A stretch of DNA of 63,915 nt, filler included, from Octopus bimaculoides (Eukaryota): NCBI RefSeq assembly GCF_001194135.2. It is 7 parts of 7 records of this genome, joined end to end, with 100 filler letters (N's around TTAATTAATTAA, not from the genome) between each part and the next. Parts side by side here need not be neighbours in the genome. Positions count along the whole stretch, not along the records: positions 27,405 to 48,149 come from NC_069010.1; 6 more parts are not named here. One strand, 5' to 3'. The notes beneath the pieces are model-generated. The model was not told the DNA's origin. It was given only the letters and a program-made list of their open reading frames with translations, and searched no databases. Below are positions 38,000 to 42,641 of this stretch, piece by piece; position 1 is the first letter of the stretch, and the number at the start of each line of letters is the position of its first letter. The position numbers and the translations under genes are program-made.

Positions 38000-38142
38000 A
38001 TGTCTGCTGTGTGAAGTTAATGATGCTACAGTGATGTTTCATCCATGTGAGCACACTGTTACATGCAACGATTGCTGTTTAAAGATTGAGCGTAAAACTT
38101 GTCCCGAGTGTCGACAAGTTATAGCTGAGAAAAGCGGATTCG
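38000..38142 (+). CDS. RING finger exon (C3HC4, Mind bomb/IAP-type; phase 2-1, 143 nt)
   Basis: ttccacag| acceptor and |gtaaga donor; CLLCEVNDATVMFHPCEHTVTCNDCCLKIERKTCPECRQVIAEKSGF with all eight zinc ligands. Confidence 0.9.
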
Positions 38143-39369
38143 GTAAGAATACTATTTGATGATCTGTCTGTTTGTCTCATTGACTCCATGATCTTCGTGT
38201 TATTGTGTAGCGTGTCAGGTCTGTCATAAATGTAGCAGATTCATGATAAAAAGTTTTCCAGATATCTTTCCTTATTGAAACTATATCAATCACCTCATCC
38301 ACCAAACTTTGTCTTCATCCAAATACAAGGCTTGCTACTGACTGCAAGATAAGACTAATGAGGAATACTGCAAGTTAAACGGTGACTAACAGAAATATCA
38401 ATAAAACTCCAGAGTTCTGTCAGTAAANNNNNNNNNNACGGTGACTAACAGAAATATCAATAAAACTCCAGAGTTCTGTCAGTAAATGTCAAGTTTTTAC
38501 AATCAATTGTGAGTGACTAGAGGCGACTAATGATTTATCAGTATTTGTGAATCTGATAAAGACAATGTTACTTACAAGAACATCAGAATCCTTTTTGGTA
38601 AAATTGGAGATTCAAATGAGAAAATTTCAACTGAGAGGTTAAAGAACAACATTAGAGACTTTGATTGCTTAATTAATTGTTTTATGTTGCTGTGAATGTT
38701 TATTTGGTGAAAGGTGGCATCGATAGTTTCAACATATTTTGCAAAGTTATCCTCCAGAAATTCTTCATGGTTTATTATGGTATGAAAATATCAAACAATA
38801 ATAGTAGTCCAATGCTTGATATGAGATGTCATCTCTTATTAAGGTACGTATCCATAATGTCTCTGGTTAGGACATATATTGTTGTGATAAATAAAAATGA
38901 TTTACAATTTTACATATAAACAAAGTATTTATGTTCTCGTATAAAATATACAAAGAGGAATAAAATAGGAATTCCTAATGTGATTTGAACACATAACTCT
39001 TTGTTTGTAACCATGTATAATTAACAATTGCTACATGGTTTGAATGACAATTACCATCCATATTTATACTTGTTCTTATTGGTTTTTAGATTATATTAAT
39101 GTTAATGCAGGCACACTTTTCTGTGTCTTTTAACTTTTGGTTTTATCTCCGTTCTTACGTTTAAATTTGATCTTGGGACCTGGTCATTGTTATTTGACTG
39201 ATAAAAGAAATTATTGTTAGTATTTGGTACTGGACCTGGTACNNNNNNNNNNAAAAGAAATTATTGTTAGTATTTGGTACTGGACCTGGTACCATTTTTC
39301 TGTGATTGCTCATGGAACTACCATAATATCAACTATTCTCAAATACAATCTATATAGTTATATAGATAA

Positions 39370-39690
39370 CTGGCAATCCATCGGTTAGGACGATGAGAGA
39401 TCCAGTTTGTTAATCAAGGAAACAGGTTGGTCATGAAAGTAACGTGAAAGTGGCTGAGTACTCCACATATATATGAACCCTTAATGTAATACTCAGGGAG
39501 ATTCAGCATAACGCAGAATGTAAAAAGGCCGACCCTTTGAATTACTGGTAGAACTCACTTTTGTCAGCTGAGTGGAGGGGAGGAGTGTGGAATAAAGTGT
39601 CTTGCTCAAGGACACGATATGCCACCAGGAATTGAAATCACGACCTTATGACCACAAGCCAAGTACCCTAACCATTAAGCCACACATCTT
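39370..39690 (-). mobile_element. tRNA-derived SINE in the RING-Death intron
   Basis: Reverse complement begins gatgtgtggcttaatggttagggtact..ggtcgtgatttcaattcctgg (A/B-box-like), then gtgtccttgagcaagacacttt. Confidence 0.7.
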
Positions 39691-40572
39691 CTCAATCTAT
39701 ATAGATATCATTATAATGATGATCACACATCCCTTTGCCAGATTATATACAATCTATATTTTTGTTTGAGTCTCAGTTCTTCTAAATCATTTCAAGTAGT
39801 TTCACTACAATAACGCATGGATGAACAGTTTNNNNNNNNNNNNNNNNNNNNNNNNNNNNNNNNNNNNNNNNNNNNNNNNNNNNNNNNNNNNNNNNNNNNN
39901 NNNNNNNAATTATCAAGGAGGCTGACTAGCATTGTAATGTCTTCAGATATTTCTTAAATCAGAGAACATTCTGGTGAAGTGTGATGTGGTCAGTTAAGAT
40001 TAAAGATTACAACCAACAACCTTCAACAAAGAGATCAGGTGTATGTTTATTTCATTTGAAGTAGTGTGTCATGTGTTTCTGGCAAGACATTTGCAGAACC
40101 AGCTTGGTTGACATTGGAATTAAGCAGAAAATGAGAAGAATGTTGGTTTGCAAAGTCTAGAGATGTGAGGACAAATGCCATGCCATTGATTTGGCACAGA
40201 NNNNNNNNNNNNNNNNNNNNNNNNNNNNNNNNNNNNTGACATCAAGTGATAATTAAATGTGATAATTACTACATTATTTGATTATGGAGGATATCTTAAT
40301 AGAGAAATGAAGTTTAGTTTATTTTGCTGTGAACCTTAATATTGAGTCATTACATGGGGTCACTATAGAAAGTATAAAAATGCTGTCCAAAACCACAGTG
40401 GCCACCAGTTGACCATTGATGNNNNNNNNNNTATAAAAATGCTGTCCAAAACCACAGTGGCCACCAGTTGACCATTGATGATGGGAATGTCTTACAATAA
40501 TAAAATATAGACCATTAATAGAGACAGTGAAATTATATTATGATGTGTAAAATTTGGAAATATTTATTTCAG

Positions 40573-40644
40573 AGTCCATAAAACTGGAGGTGAAGCATCT
40601 CAATAGAGTGTCGATGATGTTAGGGAATCAATGGCAGCAAGTTG
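40573..40644 (+). CDS. Death domain, N-terminal exon (phase 1-1, 72 nt)
   Basis: tatttcag| acceptor and |gtgagt donor; SIKLEVKHLNRVSMMLGNQWQQV; in frame with both the RING exon and the next exon. Confidence 0.82.
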
Positions 40645-42435
40645 GTGAGTATAAAATACCTAATTGATTCTTATACATTTTTGCATTCACTTGTGCGCTT
40701 GTTTGTTAGAATGATTGAGAACAGTTTCCATTCTTTTAATTTCCAATTGAAAGTTTAGCAGTAAAGTAATTCTATTCAAGAAACTTCATAAAATCAAGGT
40801 TTGCATGGTTGGTAAAATGGATTAATTAGAGGACACAAAAGATTTAATATTCTCTTTTAAAATAGGGATTTAAAATATGTTGTTTATGTATAAACAGGTG
40901 AGTTAATGGCTATGATTTTGTTTCTTTACATTTTTACTATGTTCACTGATAGGTTGTTGTTGAGACAGATATCTGCCTCAATTTGGCAGGTTTCTTCAAN
41001 NNNNNNNNNAAAAGTGTTCCAGGAGTGACATCATTCTTTCTCTGAGGAGAAGAGACCCCCATTATCAAATGCTACATCTTTAACCCAAGAGTGTGAATTT
41101 TCTGTGACATGTTGTAGCCCTTCCCCTGACCAGTCTATATCTATTGTGGTCCTTGAGCCACAGGTCAACCTATAGTCTTGTCTCTAAACAGACAGTCCCA
41201 CCCTGTTGATTGTTTTCATGGGTGGATTGAACTCAGCATTGTATGTTAATGAAACACTCACAAATTATGAAATGATTACTATGTTTTAAATTTTGGAAAA
41301 AAGATTTTGTAAGGGATTATAATATTATTCATGCATAAGAAGCTCCCATATTTTTTTAACCTAATTTTTGACAAAAAATGGTTCCTTATACANNNNNNNN
41401 NNTTTTTAACCTAATTTTTGACAAAAAATGGTTCCTTATACATGTTAAAATAAGGTATCCTAACAAAAGATGTTCCATTTCTCATTTGAAATCCTTTCAT
41501 ACCCTTTTATATTACAAATATCATTTGGAAAGGCATGAACATCACAATATTCCATTTCTCCTCGTGTGAATGGGTAAGAACAGAAAGTATCATTTATACA
41601 AACTTCCCATTATTTACAACAATGTCTTGTACCTCCCCATTATACTTGTTTACATCTAAGTAGACTGTCCTGTAGTGAGATGTATTTATCCTCTCAGTCA
41701 GCTGATAGAAATGATTTATCTAAATTAAGAGAAGACATCATTTATGACACGGTCAACTTGTTACATGAGATTAGAATGTTACAGGAAAGAATTGCAAGAT
41801 GAATTCTTTAAGCTGAGCCACTTGACTGGAGACCAAGGAACTGACCAAAATTGAGACGGTTGGATAATATCTNNNNNNNNNNGTCTTAATTAGTCAAGCT
41901 TGAGAATCCAACTGGATAGTAAGACGAAGGTAGCTTCTGATAGGAGCCTTTGAAGGGGGTGCCTGGGGACTCTACCCCCACAACCCTTTTATGAATAGAG
42001 GGTAGAGAAAATGGATGGATGGATGGATGGATGAGATAATGTGACTCTTTGGATGGTGTTAATTGATTCTTTAGGTTTTCATACCCACATAACCATTTCT
42101 CCTGCCATCTCTTTACCAGAAATTCTCTCAAATATAATTTTCAATACTTTTTAAACAATTTCTCCATTTCAACCCTTTATTTCAATCTTTTTGTTATCTT
42201 TTAATCACCATTCCTAGAAATAGAGAACAATGTCTTATAGTTTTCATTTTTCTTACCTATTGTTTAATTTCTCTCCTGACATAATTGTTGTTATATTTAT
42301 TACAATCTACAATATGCATCTTTTATTTTATTATTGAAATTTTTGCAATTATTTATTATGTTTGTATGTTTTGCAGGAATTGAATTAGGACTTAAACAAA
42401 TTGAGCTGGANNNNNNNNNNTTGTATGTTTTGCAG

Positions 42436-42641
42436 GAATTGAATTAGGACTTAAACAAATTGAGCTGGATATTATCAAGGCTGACCATCCATGTGATACT
42501 ATAGGACAGAGCTTCCAGATGCTCAAAAAATGGTTCAAGAAGTGTAAAACAAATGAACGCACATTCAAAACACTCAGAGACGCTTTTGAATTATTTCACT
42601 GTTATGATGCACTCAAATGTCTAGACAGTGTAAATGTTTAG
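42436..42641 (+). CDS. Death domain, terminal coding exon ending in TAG
   Basis: ttttgcag| acceptor (also duplicated at 42377 by a gap artefact); GIELGLKQIELDIIKADHPCDTIGQSFQMLKKWFKKCKTNERTFKTLRDAFELFHCYDALKCLDSVNV* shows the LGL..I..DHP..Q...ML..W...T...L..A Death-domain pattern. Confidence 0.85.

What the first reader, a model, noticed from the sequence alone, without database searches (positions are those of the whole stretch)
38000..42641. Hidden RING-Death domain gene end; likely ANK-RING-Death E3 ligase/adaptor
Seen: three plus-strand exons with canonical splice sites join in frame (phase 1-1-1): ...CLLCEVNDATVMFHPCEHTVTCNDCCLKIERKTCPECRQVIAEKSGF-E-SIKLEVKHLNRVSMMLGNQWQQV-G-IELGLKQIELDIIKADHPCDTIGQSFQMLKKW...V*. 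The Death-domain exons are absent from the ORF track. Established: Mind bomb (MIB1/2) ligases end in ankyrin repeats plus RING fingers and have no Death domain; Death domains mediate homotypic signalling-complex assembly in TNF/Toll/Imd/apoptosis pathways. Inference: with the nearby ankyrin exons, this is a lineage-specific sensor/ubiquitin-ligase/adaptor fusion, plausibly in innate immunity.
Basis: partly seen in the sequence, partly recalled or inferred. Interest (0 to 1): 0.82.

Follow-up and report, generated by a model that had tools for sequence, protein, structure and literature searches.

The report
Octopus RING–Death domain gene end
The three exons are real, spliced and expressed, and encode a ubiquitin-ligase RING finger followed by a Death domain; the gene is already in RefSeq (Octopus bimaculoides LOC106879217) and belongs to an uncharacterised ankyrin–RING–Death family seen so far only in the genus Octopus.

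Summary
Plus-strand exons 38000-38142, 40573-40644 and 42436-42641 join in frame. The 139-aa peptide passes Pfam's cut-offs for zf-C3HC4_3 and Death. An AlphaFold model superposes on solved Death domains and on IAP/IDOL RINGs. RNA contigs and raw reads carry both GT..AG junctions. All listed gaps lie in introns.

It is not hidden: RefSeq has it as LOC106879217 (152 aa). That model starts at an intronic ATG. RNA depth jumps about 12-fold at the acceptor before 38000, and one RNA contig continues upstream into sequence absent from the piece, reading ...KIKTPPL|CLLCEVN. This matches the pre-RING linker of the paralogues, so the real protein is probably longer.

The nearby ankyrin exons are on the minus strand. 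They form the spliced 5' end (ATG at 32318) of a divergently oriented paralogue, not upstream exons of this gene as assembled.

The ANK–RING–Death architecture is real in paralogues: 26 of the 150 best cluster representatives, and all 21 looked up are Octopus. RefSeq names them 'MIB2-like'. They lack the Mind bomb N-terminal domains, and sister paralogues end in RING–RING.

A role as a Death-domain-recruited E3 ligase is inferred, not shown. Interest is moderate.

The parts
38000..38142 (+). RING exon (143 nt; x|CLLCEVN...AEKSGF|). C3HC4 RING with all eight zinc ligands: C-x2-C-x11-C-x-H-x3-C-x2-C-x8-C-x2-C.
   Evidence: Pfam zf-C3HC4_3 35.9 bits. RNA unitig exactly 38000-38142, with a depth step of 25.5 to 314 in X10. 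Foldseek and phmmer match cIAP, XIAP and IDOL RINGs.
37962..37999 (+). First 13 codons (MLSVAYGYALFHR) of the RefSeq 152-aa model. By RNA this stretch is intron: polypyrimidine tract plus CAG acceptor.
   Evidence: P0001 sequence. Depth here is at intron level in five runs.
38143..40572 (+). Intron, phase 1, GT..AG. Holds gaps 38428-38437, 39243-39252, 39832-39907, 40201-40236 and 40422-40431, and a repeat with very high RNA depth at about 39562-39753.
   Evidence: Joint 38141>40572 (cut +1) in X4, X10, X14 and X19. Gap flank duplications.
40573..40644 (+). Death-domain exon a (72 nt, phase 1-1; ESIKLEVKHLNRVSMMLGNQWQQV).
   Evidence: RNA joints on both sides. tblastn to paralogues. Pfam Death hit starts here.
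40645..42435 (+). Intron, phase 1, GT..AG. Holds gaps 41000-41009, 41393-41402, 41873-41882 and 42411-42420.
   Evidence: Joint 40643>42435 (cut +1) in X14 and X19; X4 and X10 contigs align to the duplicated copy at 42376/7.
42362..42410 (+). Artefactual 49-nt duplicate of the exon-3 acceptor region, left of the 10-N gap.
   Evidence: Exact duplicate of 42421-42469.
42436..42641 (+). Death-domain exon b, coding part with stop codon (GIELGLKQ...CLDSVNV*).
   Evidence: 45-52% identity to paralogue Death domains.
42642..43190 (+). 3' UTR, at least to 43190. The 84-N gap at 42888-42971 is really 39 nt (GTGGCTCCACAAGAAATCAGGGGGTTGTGAATGCAATTA).
   Evidence: RNA depth stays at exon level, and contigs bridge the gap (sections 2 and 5c).
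27405..32336 (-). Neighbouring paralogue, 5' part. Exon 1 is 32336-32235 (ATG at 32318), exon 2 is 31856-31705, exon 3 is 29678-29522, and the ankyrin exon runs from 27949 to the piece's edge. Not part of the RING-Death transcript as assembled.
   Evidence: Pfam Ank hits. tblastn to the N-termini of P0012 and P0025. CT..AC joint 31856>32235, and a loose end matching 29649-29678.

Best explanation
Positions 38000-42641 (+) hold the last three coding exons of an expressed Octopus bimaculoides gene, LOC106879217.

The gene belongs to a paralogue family so far seen only in the genus Octopus. Its members have N-terminal ankyrin repeats, a conserved linker, one IAP/MIB-type RING-HC finger and a C-terminal Death domain.

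The family appears to derive from a Mind-bomb-like ANK-RING-RING stock. Two phase-1 exons encoding a Death domain stand where sister paralogues carry the second RING.

Shown:
- the exons, their splicing and their expression;
- the two domains, by sequence and by predicted fold;
- the family architecture in paralogues;
- that the RefSeq model is cut short at its 5' end.

Inferred:
- The full protein carries the family linker and, probably, ankyrin repeats. These would be encoded by exons that lie in an assembly gap or outside this piece.
- The protein works as an E3 ubiquitin ligase. Its Death domain would dock it by homotypic contacts onto Death-domain assemblies (RIPK1-like, receptor or adaptor complexes). 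There the RING, with an E2, would ubiquitinate neighbours or itself, and the ankyrin repeats would choose substrates.
For: Exons, frame and domains.

RNA junctions in four runs.

Acceptor use at 38000:
- Depth step of 25.5 to 314 (X10), 8.1 to 121 (X4), 5.5 to 18 (X14) and 2.7 to 92 (X29); a unitig starts exactly at 38000.
- An X3 contig continues 21 nt upstream as AAAAATTAAAACACCACCACT, giving KIKTPP-L|CLLCEVN. This sequence is absent from the window.
- It resembles the paralogue linkers ...LKEKIKTIFTPPLLC... and ...LKQKMKTLLPSLCLLCEVN....

Family:
- The exhaustive representative search gave 183 hits. 26 of the best 150 have a RING followed by a Death domain.
- Pfam finds ANK + zf-C3HC4_3 + Death in P0005, P0007, P0011, P0012 and P0014.
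- All 21 looked up are O. bimaculoides, O. sinensis or O. vulgaris.
- P0012 lies about 250 kb away on the same chromosome and has the same 3' exon structure, linker | RING | DD-a | DD-b.
- Sister paralogues P0073 and P0085 are ANK + two RINGs, with no MIB_HERC2 or ZZ domain.

Fold:
- AlphaFold2 model with mean pLDDT 78.9, and about 90 over the Death domain.
- Foldseek against PDB: ankyrin-G DD 4o6x (TM 0.79, 1.4 A), then RIPK1, RAIDD, TNFR1 and FADD Death domains. The RING part matches IDOL, cIAP2 and XIAP.
- phmmer against PDB: RIPK1 DD E 1.5e-5, cIAP RINGs E 2e-3.

Precedents for RING ligases acting on or in Death-fold complexes:
- MIB2 ubiquitinates RIPK1, including its Death domain (PMC5912950).
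- Oyster IAPs have BIR-DD-RING architectures (PMC8917759).
Against: - No ankyrin or linker exon is present on the + strand upstream of 38000 in the piece. The N-terminus of this particular gene is therefore unknown.
- The upstream sequence rests on a single 21-nt contig end from one run. Four other runs gave no contig over 38000-38112.
- No enzymatic, binding or expression-by-tissue data exist. Run identities are coded.
- IAP/MIB-type RINGs normally sit at the very C-terminus, where their tail supports dimerisation (my own knowledge). Here about 90 further residues follow, so activity cannot be assumed.
- Restriction to Octopus rests on cluster representatives at 50% identity and on the best 150 hits only.
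Confidence: 0.7

Rival explanations
1. Assembly inversion. The minus-strand ankyrin exons at 27405-32336 and the plus-strand RING-Death exons would be the two halves of one gene. A scaffolding error, or a real inversion, would have turned one block, with the linker exon lost in a gap.
For: - The two units are complementary. The neighbour shows only a 5' half (ATG, N-terminal motif, ankyrins; the called gene of 356 aa runs off the piece). The finding shows only a 3' half.
- Both belong to the same family.
- Both have spliced upstream exons that are missing from the piece.
- The 5.7 kb between them is a patchwork of 11 gaps and very high-copy repeats.
- The O. sinensis protein P0025 is the best match both to ankyrin exon 2 (70%) and to the RING exon (77%).
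Against: - Opposite strands, with proper splice-site orientation in each.
- Contig depth of ankyrin exons 1-2 against the RING exon is 17.5 vs 113 (X4), 61 vs 289 (X10), 12.8 vs 12.8 (X14) and 34 vs 90 (X29). The ratio ranges from 1 to 6.5 and is not constant.
- Ankyrin exon 3 matches other paralogues better than P0025.
- The chromosome-scale GCA_001194135.2 record keeps the same arrangement, though it is probably a re-scaffolding of the same contigs (my own knowledge).
Confidence: 0.2
2. Truncated duplicate. A partial duplication would have copied only the linker, RING and Death exons. The locus would then make a short RING-Death protein (like the 152-aa RefSeq model, or from an unrelated 5' exon), or a non-coding or decaying transcript.
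For: - No + strand ankyrin exons lie within 5.7 kb upstream, although a complete paralogue gene (P0012) fits in 5.7 kb.
- RefSeq models a 152-aa product.
- Many short family entries exist: P0002 (241 aa), P0004 (130 aa), P0008 (248 aa).
Against: - The ATG used by RefSeq lies in sequence that at least 90% of transcripts splice out.
- Without an upstream coding exon, the first in-frame Met removes the first zinc-ligand pair (direct reading of the sequence).
- The upstream contig reads in frame as the family's linker.
- The three exons have an intact frame, all zinc ligands and a well-folding Death domain.
- The transcript is present in all 18 RNA runs listed for exon 3.
Confidence: 0.15
3. Adaptor or decoy rather than enzyme. 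The Death domain would be the working part, seeding or capping Death-domain oligomers, and the RING would be catalytically silent or would only control the protein's own turnover.
For: - The RING is internal rather than C-terminal, unlike IAP, MIB and IDOL RINGs.
- Paralogue isoforms vary the RING-Death linker (CPKSEEKAVQ-type repeats) and skip Death exon a (P0008, P0027-P0029). This suggests the Death module is what is being tuned.
Against: - All eight zinc ligands are kept, and most are invariant or nearly invariant across 23 family members.
- The RING passes Pfam's cut-off and models onto E2-binding RINGs at 1.6-2.0 A.
Confidence: 0.15

Closest known systems
Octopus 'E3 ubiquitin-protein ligase MIB2-like / MIB1-like / ankyrin-3-like' RefSeq proteins (e.g. 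XP_014782788.1 = P0012 of O. bimaculoides; XP_036355694.1 = P0011 of O. sinensis; CAI9744105.1 = P0007 of O. vulgaris)
   Same: The same RING-Death C-terminus at 43-55% identity. The same exon structure. The same pre-RING linker motif. One copy lies on the same chromosome.
   Different: They carry 3 to more than 9 ankyrin repeats upstream, which are not demonstrable for this gene in this piece. Many have a repeat-rich spacer between RING and Death, which this gene lacks. All are automatic predictions without functional study.
Mind bomb E3 ligases (MIB1/MIB2)
   Same: Ankyrin repeats followed by zf-C3HC4_3 RINGs. Octopus sister paralogues P0073 and P0085 end in two such RINGs. Mammalian MIB2 acts in the TNF receptor complex and ubiquitinates RIPK1, including its Death domain (PMC5912950).
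   Different: No MIB/HERC2-ZZ-MIB/HERC2 or REP region in any paralogue scanned. One RING instead of two or three. A Death domain that Mind bomb proteins lack. MIB2 reaches RIPK1 through its MZM region, not through a Death domain.
Inhibitor-of-apoptosis ligases with a death-fold domain (mammalian cIAP1/2: BIR-UBA-CARD-RING; oyster BIRC11-type: BIR-DD-RING)
   Same: The same RING subtype: the best solved-structure RING matches are cIAP1/2, XIAP and IDOL. A death-fold domain lies adjacent to the RING in one chain. Molluscan lineage-specific expansion (PMC8917759).
   Different: No BIR domain. The order is RING then Death, not death-fold then C-terminal RING. It is a Death domain proper (PF00531), not a CARD.
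Death domains of RIPK1, ankyrin-G, RAIDD/CRADD, TNFR1 and FADD
   Same: Best sequence hits in PDB (RIPK1 E 1.5e-5, CRADD 9e-5, ankyrin-3 1.6e-4). Best fold hits, TM 0.75-0.86 normalised to the target, rmsd 1.4-2.3 A.
   Different: Only 18-30% identity. None of these proteins carries a RING.

Membership tests
Death domain (Pfam PF00531, death-fold superfamily) | Sequence match to the family profile above the curated threshold | tested here: met
   35.0 bits for the 139-aa peptide and 36.5 bits for the Death part alone, against a cut-off of 22.6. Covers profile positions 2-80 of 86.
Death domain (Pfam PF00531, death-fold superfamily) | Compact antiparallel helical bundle superposable on solved Death domains | tested here: met
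   AF2 pLDDT is about 90 over residues 67-151 of P0001, with helices at 67-87, 92-101, 106-120, 128-137 and 141-151. Foldseek gives TM 0.75-0.86 (normalised to the target) and rmsd 1.4-2.3 A to ankyrin-G, RIPK1, RAIDD, TNFR1 and FADD Death domains. DSSP gives five segments; the long first one covers the usual helix 1 and 2 positions.
Death domain (Pfam PF00531, death-fold superfamily) | Homotypic Death-Death oligomerisation | not testable with these tools
   Needs binding or assembly assays.
RING-HC E3 ligases of the zf-C3HC4_3 (IAP/MIB/IDOL) type | Eight zinc ligands in C3HC4 order and spacing | tested here: met
   C-x2-C-x11-C-x-H-x3-C-x2-C-x8-C-x2-C, read directly from the sequence. C29, H31 and C47 are invariant and C14, C17, C35 and C50 nearly invariant in 23 family members; the eighth ligand, C38, appears in neither list.
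RING-HC E3 ligases of the zf-C3HC4_3 (IAP/MIB/IDOL) type | Profile match above the curated threshold, and a RING fold | tested here: met
   35.9 bits against a cut-off of 27. Foldseek matches IDOL, cIAP2 and XIAP RINGs at 30-35% identity and rmsd 1.6-2.0 A.
RING-HC E3 ligases of the zf-C3HC4_3 (IAP/MIB/IDOL) type | C-terminal tail with a conserved aromatic residue closing the RING dimer / E2~Ub site, at the protein's end | tested here: inconclusive
   The exon ends ...CPECRQVIAEKSGF. The Phe lies 10 residues after the last Cys, against 11 in cIAP1 and XIAP (the latter recalled from my own knowledge). The chain then continues into the Death domain instead of ending.
RING-HC E3 ligases of the zf-C3HC4_3 (IAP/MIB/IDOL) type | E2-dependent ubiquitin transfer | not testable with these tools
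   Needs an in vitro ubiquitination assay.
Mind bomb (MIB1/MIB2) | N-terminal MIB/HERC2 - ZZ - MIB/HERC2 module and REP repeats | tested here: not met
   No such Pfam hit in any of 15 family proteins scanned, including the full-length P0007, P0013, P0014, P0025 and P0085. The N-terminus of the window's own gene is unknown.
Mind bomb (MIB1/MIB2) | Two or three C-terminal RING fingers after the ankyrin repeats | tested here: not met
   One RING followed by a Death domain and the stop codon. Only sister paralogues P0073 and P0085 have two RINGs.
Octopus ANK-RING-Death paralogue family | RING directly followed (with or without spacer) by a C-terminal Death domain, encoded by RING | DD-a | DD-b exons | tested here: met
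   Alignment A1 shows 43-55% identity to the closer members. The exon pattern is identical in P0012 on L002.
Octopus ANK-RING-Death paralogue family | Conserved pre-RING linker (...PLDLI...LKEK.K..FPP.C) | tested here: inconclusive
   Only seven residues (KIKTPPL) are recovered, from one RNA contig. They fit the motif. The exon is not in the piece.
Octopus ANK-RING-Death paralogue family | Ankyrin repeats N-terminal to the linker, in the same polypeptide | tested here: inconclusive
   No + strand ankyrin exon occurs between 32337 and 37999. About 1.9 kb of that stretch is N. The ankyrin exons present are on the minus strand.
Inhibitor of apoptosis proteins (IAP) | At least one BIR domain | tested here: not met
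   No BIR hit in the peptide or in any paralogue scanned.

The most novel reading that the evidence does not exclude
Octopuses would have evolved their own class of E3 ligases that plug directly into Death-domain signalling assemblies. A Mind-bomb-like ANK-RING-RING gene swapped its second RING for a Death domain and then multiplied into dozens of rapidly diverging copies. Ankyrin arrays, RING-Death spacers and alternative skipping of a Death exon all vary between copies. This pattern is typical of immune or cell-death arms races, and it would give cephalopods, whose immune signalling is poorly known, a private ubiquitin layer on TNF/Toll/RIPK-like pathways.
Probability: 0.3. Interest if true: 0.6.

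Novelty: new variant of a known kind. Interest (0 to 1): 0.4.

Why it matters
Domain shuffling around Death-fold adaptors is a recurring route to lineage-specific immune and cell-death wiring. Amphioxus, sea urchin and oyster are examples (my own knowledge; oyster IAPs in PMC8917759).

A RING ligase that carries its own Death domain would be recruited to Death-domain oligomers without an adaptor. Vertebrates achieve this only indirectly: MIB2 uses its MZM region and cIAPs use TRAF2.

If active, the Octopus family offers a compact natural experiment on how ubiquitination is targeted to such assemblies. It also offers an entry point into cephalopod immune and cell-death signalling, which is barely characterised.

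In practical terms:
- The RefSeq model for LOC106879217 is 5'-truncated.
- This part of the O. bimaculoides assembly (gaps, duplicated gap flanks, missing exons) needs long-read correction.
- The 'MIB2-like' names are misleading.

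Tried and rejected
1. Reads over the whole piece. Only sub-stretches could be used, so no read-level link between the ankyrin exons and the RING exon could be sought.

2. The upstream exon.
- The 21-mer from the X3 contig is absent from the window with up to 2 mismatches and from L002 with up to 3 mismatches.
- DNA-run contigs do not bridge the gaps at 37012-37221 and 37340-37439, because the flanks are repeats of enormous copy number.
- Four more RNA runs gave no contig over 38000-38112, so the upstream sequence has single-run support.

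3. The neighbour's 356-aa protein. Two word-index searches with its exon peptides returned only generic ankyrin proteins. The second search was, by my mistake, a repeat of the same query. The region left of the piece therefore could not be fetched.

4. Profile search of the PDB with the whole family alignment was swamped by ankyrin and DARPin hits. It was replaced by a single-sequence search.

5. Rfam and tRNA scans of the piece found nothing.

6. Hypotheses considered and rejected:
- That the finding is a chance ORF pattern. Rejected by Pfam, RNA and homologues.
- That a gap breaks the frame. Rejected: all gaps are intronic.
- That it is a true Mind bomb orthologue. Rejected: no MZM or REP region, and a single RING.
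- That it is an IAP. Rejected: no BIR domain.

Full report
**Source.** The piece is Octopus bimaculoides. The spliced peptide is 100% identical to RefSeq 'uncharacterized protein LOC106879217' (P0001, 152 aa). UniProt lists it as a 'Death domain-containing protein' with precomputed Pfam PF00531 and PF13920. The gene sits on CM046630.1 of GCA_001194135.2 at about 9.586-9.591 Mb.

**Observation.**
- Pfam gives zf-C3HC4_3 at 35.9 bits (cut-off 27) and Death at 35.0 bits (cut-off 22.6).
- The RING has all eight ligands: C-x2-C-x11-C-x-H-x3-C-x2-C-x8-C-x2-C.

**RNA.** RNA contigs of X4, X10 and X14 and raw reads of X19 carry the joints 38142>40573 and 40644>42436 with GT..AG ends, in 10 and 14 raw reads respectively. 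The Death domain is found by HMM and by fold, and the spliced reads exist.

**Gaps.** The piece has 39 runs of N. Nine lie between 38000 and 42641, and all are inside the two introns.
- Fourteen gaps in the piece are flanked by a 39-49-nt direct duplication. RNA and DNA contigs read straight through, skipping one copy plus the Ns (38378>38438, 39202>39253, 36807>36867). These are gap-closing artefacts, not missing sequence.
- The gaps at 41000 and 41873 are 3 nt in reality (10 N with 7 'left out').
- The 84-N gap in the 3' UTR is 39 nt, and its letters are given by RNA contigs.
- The gap at 42411-42420 duplicates the exon-3 acceptor (42362-42410 equals 42421-42469). This explains why some contigs join 40644 to 42377.

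**The 5' end.** RefSeq starts the protein at ATG 37962, adding MLSVAYGYALFHR. RNA says otherwise.
- Contig depth jumps at 38000 from 8.1 to 121 (X4), 25.5 to 314 (X10), 5.5 to 18 (X14) and 2.7 to 92 (X29). A 143-nt unitig spans exactly 38000-38142. The AG at 37998-37999 is therefore the acceptor used by the great majority of transcripts.
- In X3, which has no unspliced reads, the contig runs 21 nt further upstream as AAAAATTAAAACACCACCACT. In frame this reads K-I-K-T-P-P-(CT|A = L), then CLLCEVN.
- This resembles the family's pre-RING linker, for example EKIKTIFTPPLLC in P0073 and LKQKMKTLLPSLCLLCEVN in P0025.
- The 21-mer is nowhere in the window. The preceding exon therefore lies in a gap or outside the piece, and the 152-aa model is 5'-truncated.
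- This rests on one contig. Four further runs gave no contig across 38000-38112.

**The 'nearby ankyrin exons'.** They are real (Pfam Ank hits) but lie on the minus strand.
- tblastn with paralogues places the family's N-terminus (MEVDKNINKILLGDTQYIQKYIKQNPRK) at 32318-32235. Exon 2 is 31856-31705 and exon 3 is 29678-29522. A long ankyrin exon runs from 27949 to the piece's edge.
- RNA confirms the 31856>32235 joint with CT..AC ends, that is, GT..AG on the minus strand, and the link of exon 2 to 29678.
- That gene is transcribed away from the RING-Death exons. Its own 5'-UTR exons, seen as loose ends at 32336/32337, are also missing from the piece.
- On the + strand between 32337 and 37999 there is no ankyrin or linker exon. 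About 1.9 kb of that stretch is N, and its right part is repeats of extreme copy number. DNA unitig depth reaches 10^6-10^7 at 37295-37344, and unique sequence starts only at about 37475.

**One gene or two.** An assembly inversion joining two halves of one gene cannot be excluded, because the halves are complementary and both lack upstream exons. However, the depth ratio of RING exon to ankyrin exons varies from 1 to 6.5 among four runs. This argues for two transcripts.

**Family.** An exhaustive HMMER search of 1.84 billion cluster representatives gave 183 hits at E<=1e-3.
- Of the best 150, 26 have a RING followed by a Death domain.
- The 21 whose source I looked up are all O. bimaculoides, O. 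sinensis or O. vulgaris. RefSeq names them MIB2-like, MIB1-like, ankyrin-3-like or PSMD10-like.
- Pfam shows ANK repeats + zf-C3HC4_3 + Death in P0005, P0007, P0011, P0012 and P0014. None has MIB_HERC2 or ZZ.
- P0012 lies about 250 kb away on the same chromosome. It is a compact 5.7-kb gene with the same linker | RING | DD-a | DD-b exon pattern.
- Sister paralogues P0073 and P0085 share the N-terminus, ankyrins and linker but end in two RINGs. The simplest history is that two phase-1 Death exons replaced the second RING of a Mind-bomb-like ANK-RING-RING gene.
- Several paralogue isoforms lack the 72-nt DD-a exon or carry CPKSEEKAVQ-type repeats between RING and Death.
- The remaining hits are Death-only or RING-only proteins. 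The Death-only ones include octopus RIPK1-like and adhesion-GPCR-like proteins and an Argonauta protein.

**Structure.** An AlphaFold2 model built on the family alignment has mean pLDDT 78.9, and about 90 over the Death domain.
- Foldseek against PDB ranks ankyrin-G DD (4o6x; TM 0.79, 1.4 A), RIPK1 DD, RAIDD, TNFR1 and FADD Death domains first. IDOL, cIAP2 and XIAP RINGs match the N-terminal part.
- By sequence, the best solved relatives are RIPK1 DD (E 1.5e-5), CRADD, ankyrin-3 DD and cIAP/XIAP RINGs.

**Mechanism (inferred).** The protein would be a RING E3 with ankyrin repeats for substrate choice and a Death domain that docks it onto Death-domain oligomers.
- Precedents: mammalian MIB2 joins the TNF-R1 complex and ubiquitinates RIPK1, including lysines in its Death domain, thereby limiting RIPK1 oligomerisation (PMC5912950). 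cIAPs and oyster BIR-DD-RING IAPs combine a death-fold domain with the same RING type (PMC8917759).
- Differences: here the RING is internal and the Death domain terminal. The usual C-terminal RING tail ends in ...KSGF at the exon border. Whether the ligase is active, and what the Death domain binds, is untested.

**Literature.** Four full-text searches found no paper on an ANK-RING-Death family in cephalopods.

**Verdict.**
The architecture exists in the family and is lineage-specific. The gene is already annotated, the adjacent ankyrin exons are another gene on the other strand as assembled, and the immune role is speculation.
- It is a new variant of known kinds (RING E3 plus death-fold domain; Mind-bomb-like ANK-RING).
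- Interest is moderate.

Noticed in passing
window 27405-32336 (-): A head-to-head paralogue of the same family. Its ATG is at 32318 and exon 1 is 32336-32235; exon 2 is 31856-31705, exon 3 is 29678-29522, and ankyrin exons follow from 27949 down to the piece's edge. Two alternative 5'-UTR exons are spliced onto 32336/32337 and are not in the piece.
   Followed up: partly
window 32297-32336: The first 40 nt of that gene's exon 1 (around the ATG) have 4-5 times the RNA contig depth of the rest of the exon (X10 296 vs 61; X4 83 vs 17.5), and the contigs branch there. Another, more highly expressed paralogue or allele appears to share this start.
   Followed up: no
window 28972-29298 (+): An open frame of 109 codons matches the Tc1/mariner transposase HTH domain (PF01498, 40.7 bits). 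It is a transposon fragment inside an intron of the minus-strand gene.
   Followed up: partly
14 gaps across 27405-48149, e.g. 28022, 28295, 30053, 36857, 38428, 40422, 42411, 45386: Thirteen 10-N gaps and one 58-N gap are flanked by exact 39-49-nt direct duplications. RNA and DNA contigs read through with one copy. This is a systematic gap-closing artefact of this assembly that can duplicate splice sites, as at 42362/42421.
   Followed up: yes
window 36945-37044 and 37245-37344; also 39562-39753 and 41290-41481: Extremely high-copy repeats. DNA unitig depth reaches about 10^7 at 37295-37344, against about 100 for unique sequence. RNA depth reaches 1750 at 39562-39753. They are probably SINE-like elements, and they are why the region upstream of the RING exon is unassembled.
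   Followed up: no
window 37848: DNA contigs of two runs, at about half the unique depth (56.8 of 108; 12.2 of 24.7), leave the reference at 37848 and continue leftwards into other sequence (39 nt given, then a repeat). This looks like a heterozygous insertion/deletion in the intron just upstream of the RING exon.
   Followed up: no
window 40627 and 40641: In RNA reads of X19, A>G at 40627 (3 of 24 reads; Asn to Ser, towards the family consensus LGS.W) and G>C at 40641 (9 of 20 reads; Val to Leu). The first could be A-to-I editing. The second co-occurs with a short foreign-flanked contig in X14, so it may be paralogue cross-mapping.
   Followed up: no
paralogues P0008, P0027, P0028, P0029 (alignment A1): Annotated isoforms skip the 72-nt DD-a exon in frame, which removes the start of the Death domain. 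Other paralogues insert 1-6 copies of a CPKSEEKAVQ-like repeat between RING and Death. No such skipping was seen for the window's gene.
   Followed up: partly
L002 3196-6013 (-): Next to the complete paralogue P0012 lies a called gene of 117 aa with only a Death domain (LOC128251290). This suggests stand-alone Death-domain copies within the same chromosomal cluster.
   Followed up: no
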